From contig OX638150.1 in assembly GCA_951804945.1 (NCBI GenBank), forward strand, positions 56,482,001 through 56,546,000: a stretch of 64,000 nt of DNA, written 5' to 3'. The DNA is from Podarcis cretensis (lineage: Eukaryota). How positions within the stretch are numbered: the first letter of the stretch is position 1; the number at the start of each line of letters is the position of its first letter. Positions 568 to 63,244 of this stretch are shown here, piece after piece. The notes under the pieces were generated by a model. That model was not told the DNA's origin. It did not search any database and saw only the letters and a program-made list of their open reading frames with translations. The position numbers were made by a program, and so were the translations under genes.

Positions 568-615
<48 letters not shown>

Positions 616-1795: not shown

Positions 1796-2168
1796 GGACA
1801 CGGGTGGTGCTGTGGTCTAAATCACTGCGTCTCTTGGGCCTGGCGATCAAAAGGTCTGAATCTCCGTGATGAGGTGAGCTCCCATTGCTCTGTCCCAGCA
1901 CCTGCCAACCTAGCAGTTCAGAAGCACTCCAGTAGGTAAATAGGTACCGCTGTGGTGGAAAGGTAAACAGCATTTCCATGAGCTCTGATTTCCGTCATGG
2001 TGTTCCATTGTGCCAGAAGCGGTTTAGTCATGCTGGCCAAATGACCGGGAAAGCTGACTGTGGACAAACACCAGCTCCCTCAGCCTGAAGGCGAGATGAG
2101 CGCCGCAACCCCATAGTCGCCTTTGACTGGACTTAACCATCCAGGGGTCCTTTACCTTTACCTTTTGT
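1796..2168 (+). mobile_element. Sauria SINE
   Basis: GGACaCGGGTGGtGCTGTGG head, (ACCTTT)n tail, TSD ttacatacaca. Confidence 0.85.
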
Positions 2169-2659
2169 TTACATACACAGCAAAGAGGGAGCAAACAACA
2201 ATAGTTCGAAAACTTTAAAAAAAACAACAGTAAAAAACATAGTTGCCAACAGGCATGGAAAAATAAAAGGTCTGCACCCATTAAAAACTAGTCCATTGCC
2301 AACAGATGGTCCAGGATGTTTTGCTACTAGAGGCAAAATAGAAAATGGATGAAGGAATGAGCGGTGCGCTCCCCCAAGGTCAAATCTGCTGCCCCTCCCA
2401 AATGCTGATGACTGCCACCTTGAGGCCACTGCCTCATAATGCCTCATGGGTTGGCTAGCCCTGCCACTGCCACAGAGAAGACCTTTTCTTCACCCACCTC
2501 ACACCATGAGGCAGTTGGGGATGGTGGTAGATAAGGGATCCAATTTTAAAATCCAGGCAGTCAAATGTGGGGAGAAATGATCTTACGGGTGTCCTGTCCC
2601 CAAGCAACTTGGGGCTTTGAAGATTAATACTAGCACTCTGAACTAGACCAGGAAACTGG

Positions 2660-3915
2660 AATACAGAAAAAAACTTATTTCTAGAGTGTACAAGTTATTA
2701 CTAGAATGGGAGACAAAAGGTGAACTGGTAAAATAAGCTATTGGGCGAGGGGTATAGAACATAATATAGAATTCAGTGCACATGAGAAATTATGGAAGAA
2801 AGACTTAAAATTTACAGCATGTTACAATTTTATGAAAATGATCAGTAGTACCTGACGCCTAGTAAATTAGCAAAGATGTATAAGTCAGAATCAGATATTT
2901 GTTGGAAATGTAAAGAGAAAGAAGGTACTTTCTATCATATGTGGTGGACATGCAAAATGGCTAAGGGCTTCTGGGAGATGATACACAATGAAATGAAGAG
3001 GGGGGGAGGCCCTTTGTATAAAGCTTTTCTTTTAGGAATTGTTTCAGATGTACCTAGAGATCGGGGGGGGGGGGATTCCTTTAAAAAAAGGGGAAAAGGA
3101 AAGGAAAATCTTTTCATGTATGCAACTAGGTAAAGGTAAAGGTACCCCTGCCCGTACGGGCCAGTCTTGACAGACTCTGGGGTTGTGCACCCATCTCACT
3201 TAAGAGGCCAGGGGCCAGCGCTGTCCGGAGACACTTCCGGGTCACGTGGCCAGCATGACATCGCTGCTCTGGCCAGAGCCAGAGCCAGAGCCGCACACAG
3301 AAATGCCGTTTACCTTCCCGCTGGTAAGCGGTCCCTATTTATCTACTTGCACCCGGAGGTGCTTTCGAACTGCTAGGTTGGCAGGCGCTGGGACCGAGCA
3401 GCGGGAGCGCACCCCGCCGCAGGGATTCGAACCGCCGACCTTTCGATCGGCAAGCCCTAGGCGCTGAGGCTTTAACCCACAGCGCCACCTGCGTCCTCAT
3501 GTATGCAACTACAGCAGCCCAAATGGTATATGTTCAGAAATGGAAGGAGGGTAAACACCCACAAAGCAGGAATGGCAGATGAAACTGATGGACTATGCAG
3601 AAATGGTAAGTTTAATTAGTAGAATAAGAGACCAGGAAGAAAGAGACTTTCAGGAACACTGGAAAAGATTTGAAATATTTAGAATATTCAAAAAACTATT
3701 GTAAACCAATTAAAACTGATTAGAGTAAATTCAGAAGTATAATGCAAACTGAGATAAAAAGGGGGGAAAGAACATGAAATAACTAGAATATGCAGTGGTA
3801 AAGGGTAAATAAAATGAAACATGGAACAGGGGGAAGGGAAGTGAAGGTGAAATGTATGGTTTGTATTTTGGTGACTGTAAATGTGTAAATTTTGTAAAAT
3901 TGGGGGGGGGGATAG
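2660..3915 (+). mobile_element. L1-clade LINE 3' fragment (degenerate ORF2 C-terminus), interrupted by a SINE
   Basis: Zinc-knuckle peptide CWKC..GTFYHMWWTC; absent at the homologous position upstream of copy B. Boundaries approximate. Confidence 0.75.
3129..3496 (-). mobile_element. Sauria SINE nested in L1
   Basis: 15-bp TSD tcatgtatgcaacta (3114-3128 / 3497-3511). Confidence 0.9.
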
Positions 3916-3952
3916 GGAACCACCTGGACATTCTAATTTGGGCCGAAAGCAT

Positions 3953-4131
3953 AGATAATCCTGTACATGATGAAGTCCTATCAGATATAACTTGATAGGA
4001 TTTCCATTGAATAGCAACAATTGCTCATTATGACCATGATGTCAAGATTGATGTGGTTTTGCGATTTTGAGGAGGGTGGAGATTCTGCACATACTGACAG
4101 CTATCTTTTTTTCCGTTGTTACACATATAAA
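3953..4131 (+). promoter_or_regulatory. Proximal promoter of IL13-like copy A
   Basis: TATAAA 4126-4131; GATA CTATCT 4101-4106; RUNX TGTGGTT 4052-4058; AP-1-like TTGCTCA 4021-4027; NFAT TTTCCA 4001-4006. All are retained in the copy B promoter. Confidence 0.7.
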
Positions 4132-4196
4132 TATTCAGCTTGCAAAGGAGCAACAAGCAGTAAGGATTGTTGTAGTGCCTAATAATCAAAAGGACA

Positions 4197-4355
4197 ATGC
4201 CCGCGTTTCTGAAAGCAATCCTGGCAATCTGCTTGTTGGTAGAAATTGTTTCTACCACTCCATTAAGACAACCAGAACTGATGGATGATAGAAAATTTAA
4301 AATATATGTTGCAAAGTTAAACACCAGCCTTGGTCCAGCATGTGAGAGCTTAAAG
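4197..4355 (+). CDS. IL13: IL13-like copy A exon 1 (signal peptide + helix A)
   Basis: ATG at 4197; 53 codons; strong donor AAG|GTAAGT. Confidence 0.9.
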
Positions 4356-7300
4356 GTAAGTCAAATATCATATTTGTTTTTATTGTCATGTCATTATGTA
4401 TTGTGGCCAATTTATTGCTCATTGAACAATCACAAAGAAGGCAAGGAGGATGTTTTGGTATTAAACCAACTTCCGTTGGCAAAATGTGCTAACTTTTCTC
4501 TCTCTCTCAAAATGTGCTAAGAAGAAGAAGAAGAAAAGGGGTTGTACTTTTTTACACAACATAAATGGTTCAATAGGATGTATCACTTTACTCAATATTC
4601 AGATTCATTCCTTGGAAGCATCAGTGTTTTATCTTTCTAGGAAACCTTTAACAGCAGCATGTTGATGATGCTACTGATTCAGAATCTTTACCATGATTGC
4701 CACTTTAAAAAAGAAATATATTATTATTTCGCAAGTGTATAGGTATTAGACAAAATCTTCATTACATTATTAATTCTAAACCACATCAGAACTTTCCTTT
4801 CATTCAACAATGATTTCAGTAATTATTCACTGATGTATGCTGCTTTGAGCACTTTGCAGAAAGGTAGGATAGAAAGTGTAATACAGTAAGTAAATAACTA
4901 TTGGATAAAAATTGTGCTGCTGAAAGCTTAAGATATTTGCGAGTTGCTGTTAGCAGACCGGGCTAGTATCTAATCTAGAATCATAAGCATTAATATAAGC
5001 AGAAACCAGTAACAATTATTTAGTGAATATGTTCTCAGCATAATGAGACAACAAGAAAATCCCAAAGTAATCTCCTTTCTTTGTAAAATCTAGAACTGAA
5101 AGTTACAGGTCACACATTCTGCTCTGCCCAGGGACCAGAATCCAGAGATATGATGCTGAAGTCCATGGCTCTACAGTGTATCTTAGAGCAACTGGCACAA
5201 TATACATGATACTGGTCCACCTATTACCCCTTTAACCATGTTCCCTCATGCTGGTAGGCTTCTGTGCATGAAATATATAGGAACAAGCTGCCTGTAGTAG
5301 ATTGTTTTCACAAATGGATTCAGGTTTCTTCTATATGAGGGCAAATGTGTTCCCCTCACTCAGTTCAGCTTGCATGGTTTACAGTTTTAGGCTTTTAAAA
5401 AAAGTCTTCCTGAAGTCCTTTGCAGAACATCATTTTTTCAGGAACACCCAGCCTGGTATCTTTGACAAACCTACAAATGAGCCATGATGCTGGCAATTGG
5501 TTATCCCCAACATCTGGTAATCGCACATACGCTGCCTGTGGAGGTGAAGACTTCATGTTGAATTACTGTAGCCATTGAGAAACTCCTTCTCATTGAATCA
5601 GTCTGGTCCATGTTTGAAGAAGACCAGCAGGCACTTCCTTCCTCTAAAATGGAAATGAGAGCGGGTGCAGGAAACAGTTGCCCAAGGTATAGCCAGCGAG
5701 TCAGGACTCGCTTGCCAAAGTTTCCTTCCTTAACCAATTTATTGCCTTTTGTTTTACAGAATTCATCTTGTGGTAATGAAGAAATAAGAAAGATTCACTT
5801 TGAACATAATGCTGAGAAAATTGTAAGTGAAAAGTTTATGTCCTTAACCCAAAATGTATAGCTTGAAAGTGTTTAGCAGCAAAAACCGAGCTGTTTGGGG
5901 CATGTGGTGGGTGGGTTGAACAGACATTTAGAAAATCTTCTGTAATTTATATGGCTACTTTATTGAGGAGTGTCCACAGTTGGCATCAAGCCATTCTTTA
6001 TTCATTATTTTGAAATGCTACAGATTGCTGTCCATATAGTCAAAACGTTTGTTGCTATGGCAGGGCAGTGGAAGGGACACTAAATTATCAGGTTGCAAAA
6101 AAGCAATTCCACTGAAAAAGTTCTCAACACTTGGGAATTGCAACACAATTTCCCAGTACAGGATAAAATATAAATTATGCATTGGAGAAAATTGCATTTT
6201 TTCATAAATATCAATATATTACTTTTTATTTAATTTCTGCTTTCCTCAGTTATAAAGGTTTTTGGATGCGCTGCTTCTCAGCCTGCTACTTCATTTGATT
6301 CAGGCAGGTCTCTTCACAATACGTGATATGGTTCAGGCTCATAGAACTTTAAACCACTATGAAAAATGTGGTTGCAGAAATTTACAAACTATGTAATGCC
6401 TTGTTAGGGACGTGGGTGGTGCTGTGGGTTAAACTACAGAGCCTAGGACTTGCCGATCAGAAGATTGGCAGCTCGAATCCCTGTAACGGAGTGAGCTCCC
6501 ATTGCTCGGTCCCTGCTCCTGCCAACCTACCAGTTCAAAAGCACATCAAAGTGCAAGTAGATAAACAGGTACCACTCCGGTGGGAAGGTAAACGGTGTTT
6601 CCGTGCGCTGCTCTGGTTCGCCAGAAGTGGCTTAGTCATGCTGGCCACATGACCTGGAAGCTGTACGCCGGCTCCCTCAGCCAATAAAGCGAGATGAGCA
6701 CCGCGACCCCAGAGTCGGTCACAACTGGACCTAATGGTCAGGGGGCCCTTTACCTTTACCTAATGCCTTGTTATGACCAACCAGGGGTATGTAGGAAAGG
6801 AGCCTTGCTTCTGCAAGTGTTGAGGCCTTCTCATTAAATCTTTAAGCCTGTCTCAGTCTGGAGTACAAGGAAGTACTTAGTTGGGAGAGAAACAGCAGAA
6901 TCCTTGCCATGTCTATTCACAAGTTACGTAGTCCTACTGAATTCATTAGGCTTTACCCCACTGTAAGTGTGGTTAGAATTGCAGCCTAAAGCTGTATTGT
7001 CATACACTCTTGCCTTGAAGTAAGTCCTACTGAACTCAGGAGGGCTTACTTCTTAGAAGGCATGGTTAGGATTTCAGTCTTATAATCTTGGAAGTGACAT
7101 CCTTCTAGAATGACATGTGCTTTTTTTAGAATATTGTTATTACACTTCAAAGAACATGTTAAAAGACACACATGATTTTTGTAATTATGTATGCCATGCA
7201 AGTAGCTGACCAAGGGAAAAACATCAGGGATTGATCCGCTATAGCATGAAACATAAATAAATTAGATTATACATAATGATAACGAGTAACTTGAGTCTTG

Positions 7301-7963
7301 AGAACATTATCTCCCTAAACAAGTAGTTCAGTTAAAAAAAGTATTGTGTCAAGTAAGAAATATGAACAAACCTTGTACTCAGTATGTATTGAAGTAGTCA
7401 TTCTACATTCAACTTTGAACTTTTCTCAACAGTGTCAAACTTACAAAAACGTATTTTTGGATGTCCACTGTGCCCTCGATAAAGCTGCAAAAAGCAGTCC
7501 AACTGAATGCAACAAAACTGTGTCTAAGATCCAGCCACACCCAGAGCTGTTTGACAACCAAGTGAGTATTCTCTGAACATATATATTTCCCATCAGTGAG
7601 AATCTTGTGAAAATCCAATCTTATTCGCTGACTCAGATCTTATCAGATGTGCGGAAAATCTGAAGAGAGATTTGCTTAACCAAACTTTGATCCAGCAGGT
7701 CAGATAGGCCTTTTGCAAGGCACAGCCACAGAATGATGAGAGAAGCTCTCAGACCTGTGAGAATTAATCAGTACTTAAATACGATCAGAATATGGGCCAA
7801 GAAAATGTGTGGATGAGCCTGTGGTAGAGAAAAAGTTTGCCCCTGCCCCTTTCAGACACTATTGGGGAGGGATTCCAGTATGGGATATATTTTTACAAGC
7901 ATATTTATAAATTGCTTTATCTTGACCTAAGAGATCAGCTCTAATCATCTGTCTCTAAAACAA

Positions 7964-8001
<38 letters not shown>

Positions 8002-8222
8002 ATCTTCTGAATGAGCCAAAATTCGTTCAGGCCTGCTTCTACAAATTACCGTTTTGGTAGCTTTGCACTGTTGGCGCTGTGCAGCCATATCAACTCTCCT
8101 TTTGTCTCCCTTTAAAGACCAGCTGCACTTTACCAAACGATGATGACATGCTAATGAAGGAATTCTGCCTCAGACTACAAAACTACGTCAGCCACTTATA
8201 TGCCAACTGTGCGAAGAGCTAA
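4197..8222 (+). CDS. IL13: IL-13-like short-chain four-helix cytokine, copy A (151 aa, 4 exons: 4197-4355, 5760-5822, 7433-7561, 8118-8222)
   Basis: Four exons joined by phase-0 GT-AG introns (159+63+129+105 nt). Protein: MPAFLKAILAICLLVEIVSTTPLRQPELMDDRKFKIYVAKLNTSLGPACESLK|NSSCGNEEIRKIHFEHNAEKI|CQTYKNVFLDVHCALDKAAKSSPTECNKTVSKIQPHPELFDNQ|TSCTLPNDDDMLMKEFCLRLQNYVSHLYANCAKS*. It has a signal peptide, a TATA box, an AU-rich 3'UTR and a helix-D F-x-x-x-L-x-x-Y motif, and lies in the RAD50 locus. The signal LKAxLA..ExVxxTPL and the C-terminus resemble avian IL-13 as I recall it. Confidence 0.85.
5760..5822 (+). CDS. IL13: IL13-like copy A exon 2
   Basis: Acceptor ttttgttttacag, donor |gtaagt; 21 codons; 16/21 identical to copy B exon 2. 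Confidence 0.88.
6407..6760 (+). mobile_element. Sauria SINE in copy A intron 2
   Basis: 13-bp TSD taatgccttgtta; empty site in copy B (~17500). Confidence 0.9.
7433..7561 (+). CDS. IL13: IL13-like copy A exon 3
   Basis: Acceptor ttttctcaacag, donor |gtgagt; 43 codons; homologous to 15927-16046(-). Confidence 0.88.
7964..8000. repeat. (CTA)n microsatellite in copy A intron 3
   Basis: Direct inspection. Confidence 0.9.
8118..8222 (+). CDS. IL13: IL13-like copy A exon 4 (helix D, stop)
   Basis: Polypyrimidine tract + taaag acceptor; 34 codons + TAA; MKEFC shared with copy B. Confidence 0.88.
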   Translation, partial: TSCTLPNDDDMLMKEFCLRLQNYVSHLYANCAKS

Positions 8223-10196
8223 AAGTGTACATCATAAGGAGTAAGAAGATGTTTGTTTCATAGGAAACCATGGCATCTGACATTGTCCTGGAAACCAACA
8301 CTTCATTTGTGTTTGTTATTCTTAATGTCTGCTATCGAAAGGGTTAAAGCAATAATTAATTTCTCCAGTCAGGAAAAAAAGAAAATCAATAATAATACAA
8401 ACTACCCACATCAGTGAGCTCAAAGAGCCTTGAGCGTCATCATATGTATTTGGAGGCTGCTACCGTGGGCAAAGATTTGAGGACCAAAATCAAATCCACA
8501 GCATTCGTTTAAAGTCCATGGCTTTCTTCCAAAGAATCCTGGGAACTGTAGTTTGGTAATGGGGCAGGGAGTTGTCGCTTTGTGGTGGGTAAACTACAGT
8601 TCCCAAGATTATTTGGGGTCACAAAAGAACATCTCCTTAAAAAATGACTGGAACAAAGAACAGACCCTCCAAGTGCCCTATTTTCCAGGGACATTCCTGA
8701 TTTAGAGAAGCCATCTCGGTTTCTGATTTGATCCCAGAATGCCCCTTCCGATCTTCAGGAGGAGGGGGGGTTGTGGGATCACGACCCCGCCCACACTCAC
8801 TCTGCGAGGCTGGCGTCAGCCTCGCAGGAGACAGGGATTCACCCAATTAGCATACCCTGTGGCGCCAGCCAATTGGCTGGTGGCAGGGGCGGGCCTTCCT
8901 AGGGCCACTTAAGGTCAGGGCAGCCCCTGGCTCGCCCCCTTTCTTCCCTGGAGACGACGCAGAATGTCCTGCTTTTCCTTAAGACATCCCTATTTTAATT
9001 GGAGAAGTGTCGGAAGATATGGAGTCATCCGACCCCCAAACTGTATGAAAGCAACCCTGTACTATATAGGAAAGTTTTCTTAATGTTTCATGTATTATTA
9101 TATGTTGGAAGCTAGCCCAGAGTGACTGGGGCAACCCAGTAAGATGTGTTGGGTATAAAATTATCATTCTTGAATGGGACGTCCCTATTTTCATCAGAGA
9201 AATGTTGGAGGAGGGTATGAAAGAAGAAGAAGCTCTCTCGAAGTCTGGTTGTGCCCAAGTGTGGCAGCAGCAGCCTTTAAGTGCCCATCTAGGAACTGAA
9301 GGTGGAAACAGGTTGAACCAGAAGCAAAAAATTTAAGGCAAATATAGTACAGTACAGCAATATTCCTCCCTCTTATCCCACAGGAGAGTCCATGGATTTA
9401 GGGCATTTTCATATGAGACACTTTTTCAGACTGCATGTACACCGTGCATTTCAGTCAGATGGCTTCCCCAAAGAATCCTGGGAATTGTAGTTTGTTAAAA
9501 GTGCTCTGTGTGGGTTGCATTTTCTATCAAGGCATGCCTTAACATCAGCAGGGAATCCATTTTTATTTTATTTCTTAAATTTGTTGTTATATAGTTGCAA
9601 CTGACGACTTTTTACCAAGCAGTAGTTTAACATGGTGTGTGTGTATGTCACTGCTGTCTGATTTGTTCTGTCAAGTCCTACAGAAAATGTCAGCATAAAT
9701 CTTGGGCAGATGTGTGGTAAAGTGGTTGTCTGCATCTATCCATCCATTCATAAAGATGGAGGGGTGTGTGAAAGCACTGAAATAGAGTTTATTTCCTCTT
9801 AGCAGTTTCATGACATTGGGTTGAACTTATTTATTTCTGTTCTATTTAACATATTTAATATTTTATATTATAAATATTTTCTTATCAAGATTGGAAAACA
9901 AACCTGTGATTAAGTGTTACAATAAATGAGATATTTTGTTGAAATTAGTAACCATAAGAGTTATGACCATTATTTAATATTTAAAACCATAGTTATATAT
10001 TTTCTTGTTTGTAGTTATGTAATTGGTACTGTTATTGTTTTCATAAACTTTCCTCATTTTGTACTGAAGAATAATTTTATACATGTTTGTACTGCAATTG
10101 CATTTATTCTGTATTTAAATTGATATGGATTTCTTATGTGCTGTTTTTATATTAAGTTAATAATGAAAATATTTAAGTTACCGAACACACAATAAA
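8223..10196 (+). other. AU-rich 3'UTR of copy A ending at polyA signal AATAAA 10191-10196
   Basis: Several ATTTA/TTATTTAT motifs at 9560-10180; the AATAAA context is conserved with copy B. An earlier AATAAA is also present at 9921. Confidence 0.6.
8661..9219. mobile_element. Non-autonomous DNA transposon in copy A 3'UTR with a GC-rich internal insert
   Basis: Inverted ends CAGACCCTCCAA ... TTGGAG(GAG)GGTATG; absent from the copy B 3'UTR. Confidence 0.6.
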
Positions 10197-11036
10197 ATCT
10201 TGAGCAAGAGTGAAGTGTTTTCCTTTGATTTTAAGAAGACTTGGATCGAGTCATTTGTGAAGCGGTATGAATTGGGCTTGACATTACACTTTATTGGGTA
10301 AAGCTGAACCAGCAACAAGGATTACAAACCCAATAAATTTGTTCACCTCACACTTTTCAGTGCATTTGCTCATCACTTTCCTAAGCACAAAAATATGTAT
10401 TTTTTAAAGATTTATTTTGCTAGGGTGATGGAGTGCTTTAATTCACTGTAATTGTGCACACTTAAAATTCGAGTATTCTTTTTACTAAAACGAGCCCAGG
10501 AAGGGAAATATATCTACACTAATACAAATAAGACTTCTAGAAACAGTTTAAAACAACCTTTTAAAACAGCTTAAAGCTCTTCAAAGCGATCACCTGCTCT
10601 GCAACTAAGTACTATGCACTTGAATCCCTCGCACAAAATTGTGACACTCTGGAGAATGGTCACATTAAGCCTTGGCCTAATCGTCCTCAGTATTCCCATT
10701 TGTACAGTGAGATGGAGGGTGGACTGTGTTTTACAAGGCCTTCTGTGTGCTTAATTCTGTAAATACGTACGTCAAATTCGTGAACATTTGTTTCTGCTTG
10801 TGGCACACTCCTAATTGCACTGGACTCAACTTGCCATTCTCCACTAGCCACCCTGGTCTCACCTCTGGGCTATTGCCAGGCTTCACCTCAAGCCCCACTC
10901 CTGATAGCAACACTTTGTCAAAAACACTAATAAACAATTAAAGAAAAGAAGAATTGCACTGGTATTGCCCTGAATGGATGAGTGGGTGTCTATCAGTGTG
11001 TGGAAATGCCGGGATGGTGAGAAGAGTTGGACTCAC

Positions 11037-11052
11037 CAGCGCCACCTAGCTG
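11037..11052 (-). promoter_or_regulatory. Candidate CTCF binding site
   Basis: rc CAGCTAGGTGGCGCTG resembles the CTCF core CCASYAGRKGGCRS. Confidence 0.5.
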
Positions 11053-11157
11053 CTCTTTTCCTCTTGAGCTAGCTTTGACATTCAGCACCAAACAGTTATA
11101 CAGTAATCCATCTGCGCTCTCTCGCTCTCTCTTTTGTTCTCTCTCCCCCTCCCTCCA

Positions 11158-11213
<56 letters not shown>
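11158..11213. repeat. (AAT)n microsatellite
   Basis: Direct inspection. Confidence 0.95.
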
Positions 11214-11214
<1 letters not shown>

Positions 11215-11397
11215 TCACCCTCAACATGTTTTCTAATTGCCTTGTAAGTCGGAACTGTCTTATAAACAAATGTCACCACTCCCAGTCTTGTCATAACTCG
11301 GACAACTGCTGTTGTCGCAGGAAACCCGCCCCCCCCCCAATCATTCAGTTTGTACAAACTTCACACACACACACACACACTACATATGCTACGCTTC

Positions 11398-12089: not shown

Positions 12090-13994
12090 CTGTCTCTCTC
12101 CTAACAAAAGTCTTTCTCATTCTCTCTTTCAGTTAGTGGGAGTACTGACTTGCCTCTCCAATGCCTTATCTTGATGGCTTATAAGGAAAGCCCACCACCC
12201 TTATTACTGTACTTTCTTATGCTGCAGTCTTACCCAAAGCCCACATCCCTTCTCATGACATAACACATTCCTAAACACACTTAACTTCTTAAAGGACACT
12301 TGAAGGAGTAATAATAACTACACAGGTTCAGGTTTCTCTGCAGTCCTTGCATAGCCTACAATTGCCACGCAAATGTTGGGACCTTTGCAAAAATGCTTAA
12401 GCCATCACGGCTTCTCACTTTGTCATACAGAGTCCCAGGACTGGTACACACCAGGGCGAGCTGGGGATGGGGAAGGAGAGATTGGTGTAGGAAGTACTCA
12501 CAGAGTGACGGAGGATGGTGAGGCAATGGGACACAAGAACCAGAGCAGCAGGACCCATCTCCAAGGACAGAGAAGCCCCTGTCTCCTCAAACACAGCAGG
12601 CTCTGAGGCATAGGGAGCAGAAAGCTGTCCAGGTGGGGCTCGCTAGCTCTGAGGGGAGGCATGTGATTCCTTAGCTGGAGTAGGCTGAGAGCAGGTGAGG
12701 CTCACTTGCCTCATCAAGCCCACATGCTGCAATCAGCATGCAGAGTACAGAAGGGCAGCGGAGCTGTGTCTGCTCAACTACTTGGATACTTCAGGATCTC
12801 TGAGGGACTGTGCTTTGGTTTGGACTTTGGCCATGTGGATTGACTCCGGACATACCTGTCGTATTGTCTTGCTGCCAGGTAGGCCAGGGATTTGGGACAG
12901 GTGTGCAGGTGATTCAACCAGGATTCACCACAGCACCAGAATGCTGCAGTTGCTTACACAGTCCTAATTTGCTCAGAAGTTTGAAACACTTAAGAAAAAG
13001 GGAGGCTTGTGTATCCTTGAACTCAAAAGCTTATATGTCCCTGGTCCCTAAAACAAACATTGGCGTACCTCATATCATAAACCTGTGCAATTGCAACAAT
13101 AATACTCACATACTATAGTCTATATATACACACACACAACCCTATAGTTAGTTGTATTATTGATTTGGTGTTTTCTTTTGCCCTCAGGCTTCCCTTGCAC
13201 ACAATACATAAATTCAAAGACTTCTGTGTTTAAAATGCTGCAGTTTTGTGTGTTTACTCTAATAACTTTGGTACCTGAACAGGAGAAAACGTCCAAGCAG
13301 TGATACTGATGTAGAATAAAGTGTTCCCATTTGCACCTGAGGAATGTTGGAGGGTGAGGCCTGGCACAAAGTATCTGAGGGTTAAGTTGTCAGATACCAC
13401 TCTCTCATTGTAATATCTCTTTCACATTTCCCTTGCGGGGGCCAGGCTTCTCTCATACCCATGGGCAAAGTCCAGCTGCAATCACAATTGCAAATAAGGA
13501 CCCTCCCGTGTGGAAGTTCCTGAGTGGGGCTTGAAGAGGAGCTTATGATGGTGCAGAGGTAGACATACAGTAGGTGGCTGGTGGATAATGGGAAGTCAGG
13601 GATAGTGGAATTTAAGATGTTCCACGTGCAGAAACAAACGTTCATGAAATAGACCAGATATCTATGGAATTAAGAATGTGAAGGGCATTGTAAAAAGTAC
13701 TCTTTCCCAACGCTTCGTACAAATGGTAATAATGAGAGTGAGTAAGTTAAGGCTTAATGTAATCATTCTATGGGTACCTCCAGAGTCCAGGCTGTCACTA
13801 TTTTGCAGGAGGGATTCAAGTAGGCAATAAACCTTATTTGAAACTTGTATTAGTATTGATATGTTTGCCTCCCTGGGCGCCTTGAAGTGAATGCAATACT
13901 GGAATTTTAGGTTTGCAGAATGAAAGTGAATTAAAGCACTCTATCTCCCTAGCACAATGAATTGACCTAAAAAGCAAAGGCTAGTGTGAGGTGA

Positions 13995-14064
13995 GAACGC
14001 CAGGCGTTCTCTGGTCCATGGGGTCACGAAGAGTCGGACACGACTAAACGACTAAACAACAACA
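13995..14064 (+). mobile_element. BovB (RTE) LINE 3' end
   Basis: GTCCATGGGGTCACGAAGAGTCGGACACGACTAAACGACT + (CAA)n tail; TSD agtgtgaggtga. Confidence 0.85.
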
Positions 14065-14248
14065 AGTGTGAGGTGAACTAATTTATTTAGTTTGTGATCT
14101 TTGCTACAGGTTCAGATTGCCCAACGGAGTGTAATGTCAAATGGAAATGTAAACTGTTTCAAAAATGACTCTATTCAAGCTTTATGGAGATATTTTCATA
14201 AATATAAAGGGAAAACAATCAAGGGAAAACAGGAGTCTCGCTTGATAT

Positions 14249-15484
14249 TTTATTGTGCGTTTTGTTACTGAAACATTTTAATTCTCAACTTAATATATAA
14301 AAGGCACATAAGAAAACCATATTAGTTTAAATATAGTATTAATTTAATTGTAATACAAACATGTATAAAATAATTATATAGTACCAACTTAGTAACGGTG
14401 TCAATAATATAACTAAAAAGAATACAATATGTAACTTTAACTATAACTTTAAATATTAAATAATGGCCACAACTTAAAAGTCTTACTGTTACTGATTTCA
14501 ATAAAATATTTCTCTCTAGATGTGCTCAGCATTATTGCATCACTTAATCACAGGTTTGTTTTCCAATGTTGATCAGAAAATACTTAGAATATGCAACATT
14601 AAATATGTTAAATAGAACAGAAATAAATAAGTTCAACCCAATGTCATGGAACTGCTAAGAGGCAATAAACACTATTTCAGTGCTTTCACACACCCCTCCA
14701 TCTTTATGAATGGATGGATAGATGCAGACAACCATTTTACAACACATCTGACCAAGATTTATGCTGACATTTTCTGTACAACTTGACAGAACAATCCAGA
14801 CAGCAGTGACATACACACATGCACCATGTTAAATTACTGCTTGGTAAAAGGTCATCAGTTGCAGCTTTATACTAAAAACAACACAGAATAGCAAATAACA
14901 AAGAATAAGAAATAAAATAAAATGTGATTGCCCTTAGATGCTCAGGCATGGCCATACAACGGGACACTTCTCCATTAGAACAACCCAATTTAGGGACAAC
15001 TGTTTCTTCATGGTTCAGTGGCTTTTTTTTTTTTTTTTTTGGTTTTAGGAGATGTCAGAGATCTTTGCCCTTTCTACTCTCCAGCCCCCACACCCAAAAT
15101 TCCAGGGAACTGTAGTTTACCCATTACAGAGCTATAATTCCCAGCCCCTAACAAACTGCAGTTCCCACGATTCTTTGGTGGAAAGCCATGTGCTTTAACT
15201 GTGCTATAAGTGAATGGTGTGGATGTGACTCCAGTCCTCAAATCTTTGCGCAAAACATCAACCTCCAAATACATATGGCGAAGCTCAAGGGGTCTCTGAG
15301 CTCGCTGCTGTGCGTTAGATTGCATTATTATTGATTTATATTTCCTGGCTTAATAAATTAATTGTTGCATTTCCCTATTTGACTGCATACATTAAGAATA
15401 ACAAACATGAATGAGTTGTTGGTTTCCAGAACAATGTCGGGTGCCATGGTTTCTTATTGGGGGAAAAAGAGATCCTCCTAGTTC
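14249..15484 (-). other. AU-rich 3'UTR of copy B ending at polyA signal (rc 14249-14254)
   Basis: Homologous to the copy A 3'UTR; cacAATAAAat context shared. Confidence 0.6.
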
Positions 15485-15604
15485 TTATGAAGTACATTTT
15501 TTCTTGTCCACGTAGCAGATATGTAAGCTTCTGACGTAGTCCAATAGAGCTGGACAGAATTCCTTCATTGGCCTGCTACCAATGTTTGGCAAAGTGCAGT
15601 TGGT
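15485..15604 (-). CDS. IL13: IL13-like copy B exon 4
   Basis: cttcttttaaag acceptor; 39 codons + TAA. Confidence 0.88.
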   Translation of the reverse strand, partial: TNCTLPNIGSRPMKEFCPALLDYVRSLHICYVDKKKCTS

Positions 15605-18600
15605 CTTTAAAAGAAGATGGGGGGGGAGGAGAGTTAAATTGACCATACAATTCCAACAGTACAATGCTAATAAAATGGTAATTAGGAGGAGGAGGCCTGA
15701 GCTTATTTTGGCCCATTGAAAAGATTTATTTTTTATTGGTTTTCCCGACAGTTGATTAGAGCTGACCTCTCAGGTAAAGTAAGTTAAAGCAATTTGTAAA
15801 TACATTTGTAAAAATATATCCCAACCCACCGAGAATCCCTTCTGAACGTTTAAAAAAGGGGGCGCAAACTATTTCCCTACTATGTCTCACTAATGAGAAA
15901 TATATACATTTACAAAAAATACTCACATGGTCTTCATACAGAGAGTCGGATGGAAGCATATTTGATACAGTGCTGTTGCAAGCACTTTGAGAGACATTTT
16001 TCAGAGCCTCCTTGACTTGGCAAAATACTCTGCCGTAAGTTTTGCACTGTTGAAAAAAAGGTTTAAAATTGAATGCAGCATGACTGCTTCAACGCAGTTT
16101 GAATGCAAGGTTCATTCATTTTTTTTGTCATTTGAGGCGATACCTTTTTATTGCACTATCTGTTTAGGAGGAAAATGTTCTCTAGAATTCATATGTACAG
16201 TCATACCTCGGGTTGAACGTGCTTCAGGTTGAGCGCTTTCGGGTTGTGCTCCACGGCAACCCGGAAGTAACAGAGCGCGTCACTTCCAGGTTTTTCCGCT
16301 CACGCATGTGCAGACGCTTAAAATGATGTTACGCGCATGCACGGAAGCAGCAAAACGCAACCTGCGCACATGCAGATGTGCCGTCGCGTCTTACGTTCCA
16401 TTCAGGATGCGAACGGGGCTCCGGAATGGATCCCGTTCACATCCCGAGGTACCGCCGTATGTTGATCTGACAGATTGGTGCATGTTACTCATTATCGGTC
16501 CATATAATAATGCTATAGCAGATCTATTCCTGATGCTTTTCCCTAGGCAAGCCAGTTGCATTGTATACACATTTTCAATTATGCTGAGTATAATTTAATC
16601 TGGTTTTTGAAGTGCAATAGTGCTGTTCAGAAAAAGCATGTGCCCTTCTAGCAGGTTGCCAACCAGACACATGACATAGTAACTATGCAGGTGCCCCTGC
16701 AACCCCAGAACTCTGAGCGTCCTCTGGTATGTGCAGCTCTGGAAAAGGCATTCCCCTTCTTCTCCAGTGCGCTTCAGTGACATATATCAAATGATACATG
16801 TACACTAATCTTCTAGCATAACACAGCAAGAAGCGTGAGACATCGTAGAGCTAACCTATGTAATTATTTACACACTATGTACAGACAAAGGAGTCATGGC
16901 GTCCTCTTTCTCGAGCTCCGAGAGAAGAAACAGGCAGAAGTAAAAGCAAAAGTACAGTGGTACCTCAGGTTGAGAACTTAATTCGTTCTGGAGGTCTGTT
17001 CTTAACCTCAAACTGTTCTTAACCTGAGGTACCACTTTAGCTAATAGGGCCTCACACTGCCACCATGCGATTTCTGTTCTCATCCTGAAGCAAAGTTCTT
17101 AACCTGAGGTACTATTTCTGGGTTAGCAGAGTCTGTAACCTGAAGCGTCTGTAACCTGAAGCATCTGTAACCCGAGGTACCACTGTACAGTACAATAAGT
17201 ATATACAGCGGAAGAGATAAGACTGTCTTCCATTCCCGCACTCTTCTCAGAGAGGCATGTGATTTACACCAATCTCTTCTGCAGCATCGGAGGCATGAAA
17301 TACTAACAAGATGAACACCTGGAGACTTCAAGATTGAAGACTCCTTAGAAAAAGCCCCAGTGAGTTCCATATGACTTACTCCAAGGCAAGAATGTATGAC
17401 AGCAATAGGCTGCAATTCTAACAACATTTATCTGGAAGTAAACTCCAATGACTTAAGTAAGACAAGGCTCCTTTTCCACATACCCCTGGTTGGTCATAAC
17501 AAAGCATTTCATAGCTTGTAGATTTCTGCCACCACATTTTTCTTAGTAGTTTAAAGTTCTATGAGCCTGAACCATATCATGTATTGTGAATAAAATGAAG
17601 TAGCAGGCTGAGAAATGGCACACCCAAAAACTTTTATAACTGATGAAAGCAGAAAACTAAGTAAAAAGTAATGTATTTATTTATGAAAAATGATGCAATT
17701 TCCCCCAAAATGTAATCTAGCATTGTAGGTCACCCCAACAAATCTCCTGTACTGAGAAATTGTGTGGTAATTTCCAACTATGGAGAATGTTTTCAGTGGA
17801 ATTCCATTTTTGTGATGTGTTTTTCATTTAGTGTCCCTTCCATTGACCTGCCATAGCAACAAACACTTTGACTGCTTAGATAGTAATCTGTAGAGAAGGT
17901 CTCAAATAAAATGCACAAGTTGTGAGACTCCTATGAAGGTTCTCAAGGTCCAAATATAGCATTTCAAAATAATGAAGGAAGAATGGCTTGATGCCAACTG
18001 TGGGCACTCCTCAATAAATTAGCCATGGCTGATGTTTGAAAATTATGGAAGATTTTCTAAGTGTCCATTATGTCAAGGACATAAACATTTTGCTTACCGT
18101 TCGCTCAGCATTAGGTTCAAAGCGAATCTTTCTTATTTCTTCATTACCACAAGATGATTTCTGTAAAACAAAAGGCAATAAATTGGTTAAGGAAGGAAAA
18201 TTTTGGCAAGCGAGTCCTGACTCACTGGCTAGAGTTTGGGCAACTGTTTCCTGCTCCCGCCCTCATTTCCATTTTAGAGGAAAGAAGCAGGAGAAGTGCA
18301 TGCTGGTCTTCTTGACAGCCTTCAAACATGGACTAGGCTGATTCAATGAGAAAGACTGTCTTAGTGGCTATAATAATTCAACATGAAGCCTCTACCTGCA
18401 AAGGCAGGGTATGCTTAGTTGCCAGATGTTGGGGACAGCCAACTTGGGATGGCAATTGCCACCATCAGGGCTCATTTGTAGACTTGCCAAAGATATGAGG
18501 ATGGACGTTGCTGTGAAAAGGATGTTCTGCAAAGAACTCCAGGGAAAACAATTTTTTTTAAAAAAACAACAACCCTCATGCTGTAAACTTTGCAAGCTGA

Positions 18601-19726
18601 ACTGAGTGAGAGGAACACTTTTGTCCTCATAAAGAAGAAACAATATTTTGAAAACAATCTTCTACAGGCAGCCTGTTCCTGTATATTTCATGCACAGAAG
18701 CCTACCAGCATAAGGAAACATGGTTAAAGGGGTAATAGGTGGATTTGTATCATGTGTATTGTGCCAATTGCTCTAAGATACACAGGGAACGCTATGCAGC
18801 CATGGACCTCAGCATCATATCTCTGGATTGTGGTCCCTGGGCAGAGCAGGATGTGTGACCTGTAATTTCAGTTCTAGATTTTACAAAGAAAGGAGATTAC
18901 TCTGAGGTTTCCTTGTTGTCTCATTGTTCTGAGAGCATTCACAAAATTACCATTACCAGTTTCTGCTTATATTAATATTTATGATTCTAGATTAGATACT
19001 AGCCTGGTCTGCTTATAGCAACTAGCAAATATCTTAAGCTCTTAGCAGCAGCCTAATTTTTATCCTGAAAATGTACACAGTTATTTATTCATTACATTTT
19101 CCACCCCACCTTTATGCAAGGAGCTCAAGGTGGATACATCACTGAATGAAAGTTCTGATGTGGCTCAGGATTATAAAGTATTGAAAATTTTGTCTAGTAG
19201 CTGCACATTAACAAGATAATAATGTATTGCCTTTTAAAAGTAGTGAACGTTTTAAATATTCATTTTGATTATTTCAGTTCTGCAACATGTACAATACCAA
19301 ATTGGGTATCATTGTCAACATGCCTGCATGTTAAGTAAAGCAATACATCCTGTTGAACCATTTCTGCTGTGTAAGAAAGTGCTCCCTTCTTATTCTTAGA
19401 GAGAGAGCACATTCTGAGAGAGAAAGTAACAACATCTGGCTCCCATTAAGTTGATTCAGTAATAAATCTTTCCTCCTTGCCTTCTTTGCAATTGTTAAAC
19501 AAGCAATAAATTGGCTGCAAAACATAAAAATAAATAAATTATGTACCTCCAGGTTCTCGCATTCCGTAACAAGCCGTTTCTGTAATATTGTTAGTTTTCT
19601 TTGAAATCTGCACTTGTCCGTTTTCTGTACCTCTCTTCTGAACTTGCCTAGTTGTTTTAACGGAGTAGTAGAGATAATTTCTACCAGCAAACAGATTGCC
19701 AGGATTGCTTTCAGAAACACAGCCAT
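15485..19726 (-). CDS. IL13: IL-13-like cytokine, copy B (160 aa, 4 exons: 19726-19547, 18160-18098, 16046-15927, 15604-15485); syntenic IL13 position and orientation
   Basis: Phase-0 GT-AG introns (180+63+120+120 nt). Protein: MAVFLKAILAICLLVEIISTTPLKQLGKFRREVQKTDKCRFQRKLTILQKRLVTECENLE|KSSCGNEEIRKIRFEPNAERT|CKTYGRVFCQVKEALKNVSQSACNSTVSNMLPSDSLYEDH|TNCTLPNIGSRPMKEFCPALLDYVRSLHICYVDKKKCTS*. It is the first gene downstream of RAD50 and on the same strand, as IL13 is in mammals. Confidence 0.88.
15927..16046 (-). CDS. IL13: IL13-like copy B exon 3
   Basis: ttttttcaacag acceptor, |gtgagt donor; 40 codons. Confidence 0.88.
16198..16457. mobile_element. Tc1/mariner (Tigger-like) MITE in copy B intron 2
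   Basis: TA-flanked, imperfect TIRs CAGTcaTACCTCGG / CCGAGGTACcgCcG. Confidence 0.75.
16955..17185. mobile_element. Tc1/mariner MITE in copy B intron 2
   Basis: TA TSD; TIR CAGTGGTACCTC / GAGGTACCACTG. Confidence 0.9.
18098..18160 (-). CDS. IL13: IL13-like copy B exon 2
   Basis: ttttgttttacag acceptor, |gtaagc donor; 21 codons. Confidence 0.88.
19547..19726 (-). CDS. IL13: IL13-like copy B exon 1
   Basis: ATG at 19726; 60 codons; donor GAG|GTACAT at the position homologous to the copy A donor. Confidence 0.85.
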
Positions 19727-19794
19727 CGTACTTTTGATTATTAGGAGCTACAGACAAGATCCTTACTGCTTGTTGCTCTTTTGCAAGCTGGATA

Positions 19795-19930
19795 TTTATA
19801 TGTGCAACAGGGGGAAGGAGATAGGTGGTGTGGAATCCCCACTATCCGCAAAGCGTAAAACCACATCTATCTGATTATGTGGAAGATCTCTCAATGCAAA
19901 ATGAGTAATTGTTGCTGCTTAATGGAAATC
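19795..19930 (-). promoter_or_regulatory. Proximal promoter of IL13-like copy B
   Basis: TATAAA (rc 19795-19800), GATA 19819-19824, RUNX AACCACA 19859-19865, AP-1-like TGAGTAA 19902-19908, NFAT TGGAAA 19923-19928; collinear with copy A. Confidence 0.7.
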
Positions 19931-20388
19931 GCAAGCAGGGCTTGCGTGAAGAAGGTTGTCTTTGCCTTGGCCCTAAAGCTCAATTAGAATGTCCAGTTGG
20001 TTTCAAGGTCCAGTTCAGAGTTCTGGTATTATCTATCAAAGCCAGGATCCCCTTAAGCAGGCTCATGCGGGGCGATGGGGAGCTGGGCACACTTGACCCA
20101 GGCCTTGGAGGGCTAAGCTGGCAGGCAGGGGAGGGGGCGCCAGGGACCAGCTGCTTTTCTGTTTGAGTTTATAAAATATCTGCATCAGAGGCCTTTTCAA
20201 AATCTGCCTGCCTATTGATCTGAGGTGGGTGGTAAGGAAAGGGTCTTCTTGGTGGCAGTGGTCTAGTTATTGAACGGCCTTCCACAAAAGGCCCACTTAT
20301 GTTAGGATTTTGGTCACAAACCTTTTGTTTTCCCAGGCCTTTTAGCAACTATTATTTTTACTGCTTCAGTTTTGACTATATATATGTA

Positions 20389-20622
20389 CAGTGGTACCTC
20401 GGGTTACAGACGCTTCAGGTTACAGACGCTTCAGGTTACAGACTCTGCTAACCCAGAAATTGCACCTCAGGTTAAGAACTTTGCTTCAGGATGAGAACAG
20501 AAATCGTGCCATGGCGGCAGTGTGAGGCCCCATTAGCTAAAGTGGTATCTCAGGTTAAGAACAGTTTGAGGATAAGAACGGACCTCCAGAACGAATTAAG
20601 TTCTTAACCCAAGGTACCACTG
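20389..20622. mobile_element. Tc1/mariner MITE (inverted relative to 16955-17185)
   Basis: TA TSD; TIR CAGTGGTACCT / AGGTACCACTG. Confidence 0.9.
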
Positions 20623-21724
20623 TATATGTATATATATCTTTGGGATTTTCTTGTTATCTCATTGTTCTGAGAGCATCCCTGTCTTTAAATATATATTATT
20701 TGCTGCCCTTTTGCTGGGTTATTGTTTCTATATTGCACATGGGTGTGTGTGTTAGGGGAGTGACAGTACCTCTGGTAGGGGACATGTTGTGCTCCTTCTG
20801 AGGTAGTTTATCCATCTTTGGTCCCCACTCTGCATTCAGCTCTCATTTGTGGCTCTTAGAAGCTGTCAGCAAGCAACACCCTTGGGAAACAGCTTTGACT
20901 TGTCAGCTAAACCAGTGAGGCATCTAATCATAGCCTGCATTTTTATTGAGGCTTGATCAGGGCCTGTATTTTAAAATGAGCTTAAAGATTTTCAAATGTT
21001 CATGCCAAGCAGAAGACCAGCTGCCTAAGAACCTTGGCAAGATGTTTATTCTCCTGGACAAGGGGGCCCCCTGATTTATAGCAGAAAACAATTCTCAAAG
21101 TCAAAGGGAATTACAGGCTGACAGCCAAGGTTACACTGACCCTACATATTACAGAAGATAAAAAAGCAGAGAAAAACATAATTAAGAGTGGGTAAATAGT
21201 AAAATAAAACCATGTGCCTCCCATTAAACTTGAGCCATATTTTTCTAAGGTTGAAAAGTCAAGAGCAGTGAAAAAGGCAACTGGCTTGGCTGGAGAAGAT
21301 AGGTTTTCTTTCTTTCTATTTTGAGGCTGGAAACTGTTCCTTACTTTGAAAAGGTTTATTCTTCTAAAAAGCTATCTAAGTTATGTATTAAATATATTGG
21401 CTTAAATGTAATTATGCAAAGGAATTAGAAGCTAAGAAATGTTAAATCCTTATGCTAGATTCTTATTTCATATAGTTGGAAGAGATCACAGGGGCCATCA
21501 GCCACCAGCCCAGCCCCCCTGCCAAGCAGGAAACATCATTAGAGCATACATATGGTTGTCAGGCCTTTGTTTAAAAGACCTTCAAGAGAAGGAGATCTTT
21601 CAATGATGATGTAAATTCAAGATCCTTGACATCTGTTTAAGATAAAAATTTGAGATTAAACCATTTGTTTTGGAGGGCAATAGGGCGAGGTGAGCTGGTA
21701 ATTAAGGTTCCTTGTTGAGACACA

Positions 21725-29268: not shown

Positions 29269-63244
<33,976 letters not shown>

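What the first reader, a model, noticed from the sequence alone, without database searches (positions are those of the whole stretch)
2168..20720. Inverted duplication creating two intact, convergent IL-13-like cytokine genes in a lizard Th2 locus
Seen: ~2170-10240(+) is homologous to the reverse complement of ~14200-20720 across the upstream flank, promoter, all four exons, introns, 3'UTR and polyA site, with a ~4 kb unique spacer between. Both copies have open frames, GT-AG introns and TATA boxes. Known: mammals have the order RAD50-IL13-IL4-KIF3A with a single IL13 co-oriented with RAD50; copy B fits that position. Inference: copy A is a lineage-specific extra IL-13 paralog, making an expanded type-2 cytokine system that ORF-based annotation would miss.
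Basis: partly seen in the sequence, partly recalled or inferred. Interest (0 to 1): 0.88.

Follow-up and report, generated by a model that had tools for sequence, protein, structure and literature searches.

The report
Two convergent IL-4/13-like lizard genes
Just downstream of RAD50, a wall-lizard genome carries an old inverted duplication holding two intact, tail-to-tail cytokine genes of the IL-4/IL-13 family; this is a real but modest addition to known type-2 cytokine evolution, and the data cannot say whether the genes are "IL-13" or "IL-4".

Summary
The inverted duplication is real. Arm A (2228-10900, +) matches the reverse complement of arm B (13522-20363), 78% identical over aligned non-coding columns, in patches of 68-97%. 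The spacer is 2.6 kb, mostly repeats.

Each arm holds an intact four-exon gene with phase-0 GT-AG introns and a TATA box (A 151 aa, B 160 aa). RAD50 lies on the minus strand and ends near 29.27 kb, so B occupies the mammalian IL13 position.

Both genes exist in Podarcis lilfordi as consecutive "hypothetical proteins" with exactly these exon joins, so annotation found them but left them unnamed. The only sequence relatives are unnamed squamate proteins. Pfam IL4/IL13 models and PDB sequences do not match.

An AlphaFold model of the A orthologue, compared with 48,161 solved chains, ranks human IL-13 (Z 10.4) and IL-4 (Z 10.0) first. The family is therefore IL-4/13, subtype unresolved.

RNA contigs from a related species cover B's exon 4 and 3'UTR. 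No RNA was seen on A's distal 3'UTR.

Independent DNA contigs from another species bridge both arm-spacer borders, so this is not a mis-assembly. Two intact ORFs after K~0.26, with only in-frame indels, argue that both are functional. The age of the duplication and A's expression remain open. The scan's other notes cover this same stretch only.

The parts
2228..10900 (+). Arm A of the inverted duplication (interrupted by an L1+SINE insertion at 2657-3917)
   Evidence: transposon content read
13522..20363 (-). Arm B of the inverted duplication
10901..13521 (.). Spacer between the arms, mostly high-copy repeats
   Evidence: contig depths of 10^3-10^5
4126..4132 (+). Copy A TATA box (TATAAAT), 65 nt upstream of the ATG
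4197..4355 (+). Copy A exon 1 (53 aa: signal peptide plus helix A), GT donor
   Evidence: matches P0004 residues 2-53
5760..5822 (+). Copy A exon 2 (21 aa)
7433..7561 (+). Copy A exon 3 (43 aa)
8118..8222 (+). Copy A exon 4 (34 aa plus TAA stop)
8223..8237 (+). In-frame 'KCTS*' after A's stop, homologous to the last codons of B
9638..9925 (+). Copy A distal 3'UTR block, 93% identical to B over the 288-nt arm (93-97% per 100-column window), with an ATTTA cluster and AATAAA at 9921
10191..10196 (+). Copy A distal AATAAA
19794..19800 (-). Copy B TATA box
19547..19726 (-). Copy B exon 1 (60 aa)
18098..18160 (-). Copy B exon 2 (21 aa)
15927..16046 (-). Copy B exon 3 (40 aa)
15485..15604 (-). Copy B exon 4 (39 aa plus stop)
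14281..15604 (-). Copy B exon 4 plus 3'UTR covered by RNA contigs of a related species (X16 records 15 and 16; X18 records 23 and 24)
   Evidence: table 8
14249..14254 (-). Copy B AATAAA (the homologue of A's proximal signal is degenerate in B)
29269..29457 (-). Last coding exon of RAD50 (approximate limits), about 9.5 kb upstream of B's TATA on the same strand

Best explanation
An old tail-to-tail (inverted) segmental duplication of about 7-8 kb lies directly downstream of RAD50 in a Podarcis-type lacertid. It produced two convergently transcribed genes. Each encodes a secreted, cysteine-rich, short-chain four-helix cytokine of the IL-4/IL-13 family. Both copies have been kept as working genes.

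Steps shown here:
- The duplication itself.
- Both four-exon, phase-0 gene models.
- Their exact conservation as annotated genes in a second species.
- The RAD50 adjacency.
- An IL-4/IL-13-type predicted fold.
- Transcription of B.

Steps inferred:
- Both proteins signal through IL-4R-alpha-containing receptors to drive type-2 responses.
- The paralogues have diverged mainly on the mature helices (A, C, D) under diversifying selection.
- Patchy gene conversion between the inverted arms keeps the promoter-proximal region, signal peptide, exon 2, intron 1 and an AU-rich 3'UTR block similar.

The subtype (IL-4 or IL-13) cannot be assigned. The pair is best called IL-4/13-like A and B.
For: Duplication.

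Gene models.

Orthologues: P0002 (160 aa) and P0004 (152 aa) of P. lilfordi, with consecutive accessions on one chromosome, reproduce every exon join. They are 94.4% and 84.8% identical to B and A.

RAD50: on the same strand as B, with its last coding exon near 29.27-29.46 kb. A skink annotation fuses the RAD50 C-terminus to exons 2-4 of a family member, which shows the same adjacency there (P0008).

Fold: the AF2 model of P0004 has pLDDT 71.6 and pTM 0.68. In the exhaustive search of 48,161 chains, human IL-13 ranks first (Z 10.4, rmsd 2.4 A, 100 of 109 residues) and human IL-4 second (Z 10.0), and ranks 3-34 are all other helical cytokines or growth factors. The second look at Foldseek's own hits puts eleven IL-4 entries on top (Z 9.9-10.9). 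The ESM Atlas neighbours of both proteins are almost all short-chain cytokine clusters.

Expression of B: a 1370-nt RNA contig covers 14633-15604 and runs 396 nt beyond the exon-4 acceptor. The spliced upstream mRNA is predicted at about 405 nt. The unique spacer has no RNA coverage.

Assembly: contigs from another species bridge both arm-spacer borders (records 25 and 28).

Selection:
- Non-coding K is 0.26.
- Only 8% of simulated neutral copies stay stop-free.
- About 8.5 indels are expected in 450 nt, against 2 observed, both in frame.
- Signal-peptide dN/dS is 0.17 and mature dN/dS is 0.72. Mature dN (0.43) exceeds intron K.
- 11 of the 23 A-orthologue replacements fall in the helix-A part of exon 1.
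Against: - No sequence-based method links the proteins to IL-4 or IL-13. Pfam gave no IL4/IL13 match at E<=10, with nothing at all for P0002/P0004 and only weak unrelated hits for single exons and relatives; PDB phmmer/hmmsearch gave none.
- Z~10 for a helical bundle is below the level the tool calls safe. Foldseek E-values were not significant. The B-orthologue model was poor (pLDDT 55).
- No RNA contig lay on A's distal 3'UTR, so A's expression is untested.
- Splicing of B is inferred from a length match, not seen, because my laid stretch ended exactly at the exon edge.
- Receptor use and function are pure inference.
Confidence: 0.8

Rival explanations
1. Both copies are IL-13 paralogues: B is the IL13 orthologue, A is a lacertid-specific extra IL13, and a separate IL4 lies further left, before KIF3A.
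For: B is the first gene downstream of RAD50 and is co-oriented with it, as IL13 is in human and chicken (PMC9465101). Human IL-13 is the top structural hit in the exhaustive search.
Against: - IL-13 and IL-4 tie structurally (Z difference 0.4), and IL-4 chains lead.
- Nothing left of copy A is visible: 1-3900 is transposon sequence, and no third paralogue is in the window.
- B carries an N-terminal and a C-terminal cysteine reminiscent of IL-4's clamp (the comparison with IL-4 is from memory).
- The profile found a single family member in each of the four other squamate species that had one.
Confidence: 0.3
2. A is the positional IL4 orthologue (inverted) and B the IL13 orthologue. Their similarity would come from concerted evolution (gene conversion) rather than a new duplication.
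For: - There are exactly two genes in the expected IL13-IL4 slots beside RAD50.
- The identity pattern is strongly patchy, 68-97%, as gene conversion between inverted repeats would give.
- A shares a shifted helix cysteine, a loop insertion and the stop position with the skink protein.
Against: - Ancestral IL4 and IL13 would have been far too diverged for conversion to start.
- Homology spans introns, promoter and 3' flank collinearly over about 7 kb, with shared indel structure.
- A+B as one clade is not rejected (p-AU 0.31), and A+skink has no support (46/0).
Confidence: 0.06
3. Copy A is a non-functional or decaying duplicate, and only B is a working gene.
For: - There is no RNA contig on A's distal 3'UTR in two RNA runs that do show B.
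- A evolves faster between species (84.8% vs 94.4% identity).
- A has about 1 kb of SINE-rich insertion in its 3'UTR and an L1 insertion about 210 bp upstream of its TATA.
Against: - A's ORF, splice sites and TATA are intact in two species, with the same length and stop.
- Staying stop-free under neutrality has a probability of about 0.08, and all CDS indels are in frame.
- The replacements cluster in helix A rather than being spread evenly.
- Only 610 nt of A's transcript was laid.
Confidence: 0.1
4. The inverted duplication is an assembly artefact.
For: Inverted repeats with repeat-rich spacers are classic mis-join sites. Logan contigs break at the repeats.
Against: - The arms differ by about 22%, far beyond allelic or collapsed copies.
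- Contigs of a different species (X5) span 9830-11110 and 12931-13818, across both arm-spacer borders.
- P. lilfordi's independent chromosome assembly has both genes as neighbours.
Confidence: 0.01

Closest known systems
Mammalian and avian IL13 (first gene downstream of RAD50 in the Th2 cytokine cluster)
   Same: - Copy B has the same position and strand relative to RAD50.
- It has four exons with phase-0 introns and an AU-rich 3'UTR.
- Human IL-13 is the best structural match of the A-orthologue model (Z 10.4).
   Different: - There is no detectable sequence similarity (Pfam PF03487 is not hit).
- The lizard proteins have 8-10 cysteines; human IL-13 has 4 (from memory).
- Here there are two copies, one of them inverted.
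Mammalian and avian IL4
   Same: - The fold matches (Z 10.0-10.9) and the gene structure is the same.
- A cysteine at the third residue of exon 4 and B's N- and C-terminal cysteines recall IL-4's disulfides (comparison from memory).
- Copy A sits where IL4 would be relative to B.
   Different: - Pfam PF00727 is not hit.
- Copy A is inverted relative to RAD50 and B.
- A lacks the N/C-terminal cysteine pair.
- KIF3A is not in the window.
IL-4/13 genes of teleosts, gar, elephant shark and frog, including tandem and whole-genome-duplication copies
   Same: - These are fast-evolving genes at the KIF3A-RAD50 locus that cannot be assigned to IL-4 or IL-13.
- They have lineage-specific cysteine patterns and lineage-specific duplicates (PMC4905449; PMC9465101).
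   Different: - Those duplicates are tandem or arose by genome duplication. Here the copies form a tail-to-tail palindrome-like pair with signs of arm-to-arm conversion.
- The taxon (squamates) was not described in the papers I could search.

Membership tests
IL-4/IL-13 family (short-chain type I cytokines of the Th2 locus) | Gene lies beside RAD50 in the KIF3A-IL4-IL13-RAD50 block | tested here: met
   RAD50 exons run on the minus strand from ~59.8 kb down to a last coding exon at ~29.27-29.46 kb. B starts at ~19.77 kb on the same strand. KIF3A is not in the window.
IL-4/IL-13 family (short-chain type I cytokines of the Th2 locus) | Four coding exons with three phase-0 introns (exon 1 = signal peptide plus helix A; exon 4 = C-D loop plus helix D) | tested here: met
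   The database proteins P0002 and P0004 join the same exons. The exon-to-helix layout follows PMC4905449, and the AF2 helices are 32-55, 72-96, 102-108 and 131-148.
IL-4/IL-13 family (short-chain type I cytokines of the Th2 locus) | Four-helix fold closest to IL-4/IL-13 | tested here: met
   In the exhaustive search, IL-13 scores Z 10.4 and IL-4 Z 10.0, at ranks 1 and 2 of 48,161 chains, with IL-15 next at 8.9. Eleven IL-4 entries lead. Caveat: the model's pLDDT is 71.6, and Z<13 is not decisive for helical bundles.
IL-4/IL-13 family (short-chain type I cytokines of the Th2 locus) | Sequence match to Pfam IL4 (PF00727) or IL13 (PF03487), or to solved IL-4/IL-13 chains | tested here: not met
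   No match to PF00727/PF03487 or to any solved IL-4/IL-13 chain at E<=10 for single exons, P0002, P0004, P0006, P0007, P0010 or the family profile; P0002 and P0004 had no Pfam hit at all, and the few other hits were weak and unrelated. The reviews stress that these genes are hard to trace by sequence (PMC7274943), so this lowers the claim but does not exclude it.
IL-4/IL-13 family (short-chain type I cytokines of the Th2 locus) | Two conserved disulfides (A-B loop to B-C loop; helix B to C-D loop) | tested here: inconclusive
   Cysteines occur at the fitting places: exon 2 'SSC', exon 3 'VFC' (A: 'VHC'), 'AC/EC', and exon 4 third residue. Their connectivity was not determined.
IL-4/IL-13 family (short-chain type I cytokines of the Th2 locus) | Binds IL-4R-alpha with gamma-c or IL-13R-alpha-1 and signals through STAT6 | not testable with these tools
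   This needs recombinant protein and lizard receptors or cells.
IL-13 specifically | Orthology to bird and mammal IL-13 by phylogeny | not tested
Position fits for B only.
IL-4 specifically | Second gene, between IL13 and KIF3A and co-oriented with IL13, with an N- to C-terminal disulfide | tested here: inconclusive
   A is the second gene but is inverted. B, not A, carries the candidate N/C cysteine pair. KIF3A was not seen.

The most novel reading that the evidence does not exclude
Squamates may not retain separate IL4 and IL13. They may carry a single IL-4/13 lineage that was re-duplicated as a small palindrome in the lacertid stem or earlier. The arms would still exchange sequence by gene conversion while the receptor-facing helices diverge under positive selection. 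This would be an independent re-invention of a two-ligand type-2 cytokine system, including a newly gained IL-4-like N-to-C disulfide clamp in copy B through a 7-residue N-terminal insertion and loss of a stop codon.
Probability: 0.2. Interest if true: 0.7.

Novelty: new member of a known kind. Interest (0 to 1): 0.45.

Why it matters
The reviews I read state that the timing of the IL-4/IL-13 split is unresolved and that reptiles are the missing group (PMC9465101). My literature searches found no description of squamate IL-4/13 genes.

This locus names the unnamed squamate proteins and gives exact gene models for two paralogues. It shows a duplicate pair retained long-term, with fast-evolving receptor-facing helices, which is useful for reptile immunology, for host-parasite work in Podarcis, and for annotation pipelines.

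It is not a new kind of system. Lineage-specific IL-4/13 duplicates are well known in fish, sharks and frogs, and public annotation already contains both models.

Tried and rejected
Sequence searches
- Pfam on each exon and on five family proteins gave no IL4/IL13 match: P0002 and P0004 had no hit at all, and single exons and relatives gave only weak, unrelated hits.
- PDB sequence and profile searches gave only chance hits.
- tblastn of both orthologues against the window found no third paralogue.
- Rfam and tRNA scans of 1-30000 found nothing, so the conserved intron-1 and 3'UTR blocks are not known RNA families.

Structure
- The AF2 model of the B orthologue had pLDDT 55. Its Foldseek and VIA searches returned generic helical bundles and were discarded.
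- Foldseek on the better A-orthologue model gave IL-2/IL-15 hits at non-significant E-values. I rely on the VIA alignments instead.

Phylogeny
- The six-protein tree was unresolved. A+B as a clade was not rejected (p-AU 0.31), and A+skink was unsupported.

Tools and look-ups
- The search of earlier findings by words returned nothing.
- Four literature searches found no paper on squamate IL-4/IL-13; a fifth found the P. lilfordi genome paper.
- Complex prediction was not used, because there is no receptor sequence in hand.

Spliced models
- The joined spliced models from the window were not sent to any search or fold tool. The exons were searched singly by reference, and the database proteins P0002 and P0004 served as full-length proxies.
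- Exon letters of copy A were concatenated once, in memory inside a script, only to count stop codons in a neutral simulation. Nothing was printed or searched.

Reads
Full report
**1. The observation**

An inverted-repeat scan of 1-26000 gave 41 collinear inverted pairs. blastn and a MAFFT alignment of arm A against the reverse complement of arm B show continuous homology from 3918-10900 to 20002-13522.

A more sensitive blastn shows that homology resumes beyond a 1.26 kb insertion in arm A (2657-3917). Read directly, this insertion is an L1 3' end with a nested tRNA-derived SINE. Homology then runs out to A 2228 / B 20363.

The limit on B (20720) is too far out, because a transposon copy starts at 20385. 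The inner limits are too conservative: the spacer is 2.6 kb, and contig depths of 10^3-10^6 show it is mostly high-copy repeat.

Over 3985 aligned non-coding columns the arms are 77.9% identical (K 0.26), but very unevenly:

| Region | Identity |
|---|---|
| Intron 1 | 84% |
| Intron 2 | 68% |
| Intron 3 | 76% |
| Distal 3'UTR | 86% |
| Distal 3'UTR, best 100-nt windows | 93-97% |

**2. The genes**

All exons have AG acceptors and GT donors, and all three introns are phase 0.

| | Copy A (+) | Copy B (-) |
|---|---|---|
| TATAAAT | 4126 | 19800 |
| Exon 1 | 4197-4355 | 19726-19547 |
| Exon 2 | 5760-5822 | 18160-18098 |
| Exon 3 | 7433-7561 | 16046-15927 |
| Exon 4 (with stop) | 8118-8222 | 15604-15485 |
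| Protein | 151 aa | 160 aa |

Both 3'UTRs carry ATTTA clusters and AATAAA signals. No third related exon set exists in the window.

**3. Context**

RAD50 exons run on the minus strand from ~59.8 kb (N-terminal part) to a last coding exon at ~29.27-29.46 kb. On the minus strand the order is therefore RAD50, then B, then A facing back. B is in the place that IL13 has in human and chicken (PMC9465101). Left of A the window holds only transposon sequence.

**4. What the proteins are**

I did not search joined spliced models. Instead I used stop-free read-through references containing exon 1 and scored only the exon.

This returned two Podarcis lilfordi proteins, CAI5766591.1 (P0002, 160 aa) and CAI5766590.1 (P0004, 152 aa). 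They have consecutive accessions on one chromosome, and both are called 'hypothetical predicted protein'. Their sequences reproduce all my exon joins. They are 94.4% identical to B and 84.8% identical to A. The window therefore comes from a Podarcis-like lacertid, and both genes are already in a public annotation, unnamed. That annotation combined RNA-seq, protein and ab initio evidence (PMC10214862).

A profile of the pair against 1.84 billion representatives, and a four-protein profile against 5.8 billion proteins, found only unnamed squamate relatives:
- Vipera latastei
- Naja naja
- Pogona vitticeps (XP_078241883.1)
- a Lerista edwardsae model that fuses the RAD50 C-terminus to cytokine exons 2-4. 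This is an annotation chimera, and it shows the same adjacency in a skink.

No Pfam IL4/IL13 family or solved IL-4/IL-13 chain matches by sequence.

Structure gives the link:
- The AF2 model of P0004 has pLDDT 71.6 and pTM 0.68.
- Aligned to every one of 48,161 representative chains, it has human IL-13 first (Z 10.4, rmsd 2.4 A, 100 of 109 residues) and human IL-4 second (Z 10.0, 110 of 133). Ranks 3-34 are all other helical cytokines or growth factors.
- In the second look at Foldseek's hits, eleven IL-4 entries lead (Z 9.9-10.9), ahead of IL-2 (9.7) and IL-13 (9.2).
- ESM Atlas neighbours of both proteins are almost all short-chain cytokine clusters.

Caveats:
- Z~10 is not decisive for helical bundles.
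- Foldseek E-values were not significant.
- The B-orthologue model was too poor to use.

Taken with synteny and gene structure, I put IL-4/13 family membership at about 0.85.

**5. IL-13 or IL-4?**

This is unresolved. Position favours IL13 for B. Structure ties. Some details look IL-4-like, but that comparison is from my memory of human IL-4 and was not tested here:
- the cysteine at the third residue of exon 4
- the 'MKEF' helix-D start
- B's N-terminal and C-terminal cysteines

The neutral name IL-4/13-like is the honest one.

**6. Expression and assembly**

All runs found were Logan contigs. I laid them on 9605-15604.

RNA-type runs of a related species (about 96.6% identical):
- The contigs lie on B's exon 4 and 3'UTR. 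X16 covers 14281-14662 and 14633-15604; X18 covers 14416-14546 and 15068-15399. No contig lies on the unique spacer.
- The 1370-nt contig continues 396 nt beyond the exon-4 acceptor. The predicted spliced upstream mRNA is 363 nt of CDS plus about 40 nt of 5'UTR. This fits a near full-length spliced mRNA, but the letters were not shown because my stretch ended at the exon edge.
- No RNA contig lay on A's distal 3'UTR (9605-10204). A's expression is therefore untested rather than excluded.

DNA contigs:
- Contigs of another species (X5) span 9830-11110 and 12931-13818, across both arm-spacer borders.
- Together with the 22% arm divergence and the P. lilfordi assembly, this excludes a mis-assembly.

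**7. Evolution**

Between paralogues:

| Region | dN | dS | dN/dS |
|---|---|---|---|
| Signal peptide | 0.067 | 0.39 | 0.17 |
| Mature protein | 0.43 | 0.59 | 0.72 |

Mature dN exceeds the non-coding K of 0.26. This agrees with the scan's note s1-838168.

Between species, A has 23 replacements, 11 of them in the helix-A part of exon 1. B has 9. In one cross-species comparison, the mature part of A's exon 1 differs at 8 of 32 residues, against about 4 of 47 pseudo-codons of the adjoining intron.

In a neutral simulation, only 8% of copies stay stop-free at half the arm divergence. The non-coding indel rate predicts about 8.5 indels in 450 nt. The CDS has two, of 21 and 9 nt, both in frame. Both copies are therefore under selection for an intact product.

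Taking the ~3.4% divergence seen in the related species' RNA contigs as spanning at most the 18-20 Myr Podarcis scale (PMC10214862), K 0.26 implies a duplication many tens of millions of years old, possibly more than 100. It long predates the genus.

The family tree cannot place the duplication.

The patchy identity is best read as gene-conversion tracts between inverted arms. The 3'UTR block is no more conserved between species than the rest of the UTR (table 3), which argues for conversion rather than extra constraint.

**8. The C-terminus**

A's stop is at the same position as the skink's. Snakes and Pogona end three residues earlier. B reads on for five more codons, which survive as an in-frame 'KCTS*' after A's stop. 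B therefore probably lost the stop rather than A gaining one. This is the reverse of the scan's note s1-838185.

**9. Verdict**

- This is a new member (pair) of a known kind. It is useful for reptile immunology and annotation, and it is of moderate interest.
- Lineage-specific IL-4/13 duplicates are known in other vertebrates (PMC4905449, PMC9465101), and the models already exist in a public annotation.

Noticed in passing
window 8223-8237 and 15485-15499: After copy A's stop codon, four in-frame codons and a second stop ('KCTS*') match B's last codons. Outgroup proteins end at or before A's stop (the skink at exactly the same position). B's 5-residue tail with an extra cysteine therefore looks like a stop-loss extension in B, paired with a 7-residue insertion and a new cysteine near the start of helix A.
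   Followed up: partly
P0008 (Lerista edwardsae KAJ6667944.1): This public skink protein is a chimera of the RAD50 C-terminus and exons 2-4 of the IL-4/13-like gene. It is an annotation read-through error, and it incidentally documents the synteny.
   Followed up: partly
window 13800-14065: An extremely high-copy element (summed contig depth >10^6 in DNA runs, 4x10^4 in RNA runs). The 82 nt at 13983-14064 are skipped in a contig of a related species (X5 record 29), so this is a presence/absence difference between species.
   Followed up: no
window 16953-17189, 20385-20624 and 1-132: Young transposon copies (93-98% alike) with a 16-nt tandem repeat lie in B's intron 2, upstream of B, and at the window's start.
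   Followed up: no
window 61064-62158 (-): A 364-aa open reading frame with a reverse-transcriptase-like sequence (LINE) lies upstream of the most N-terminal RAD50 exon identified (59459-59821), either in RAD50's first intron(s) or 5' of the gene. Further RT fragments are at 22521-23470, between RAD50 and copy B.
   Followed up: no
window 4908-5313 and 18646-19060: A ~400-nt block of intron 1 is 88-92% identical between the arms, against a 68-84% background. It matches no Rfam family. It could be a conversion tract or a conserved intronic regulatory element.
   Followed up: partly
window 4095-4110 and 19815-19825: A conserved AGATAG (GATA-type) motif on the opposite strand lies just upstream of both TATA boxes. 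Copy A also has a TTTTCC (NFAT-like) core there. These are motif resemblances only.
   Followed up: no
window 7964-8001, 568-615, 11159-11214: Perfect trinucleotide microsatellites: (TAC)12.7 in A's intron 3, (AAT)16, and (TAA)18.7.
   Followed up: no
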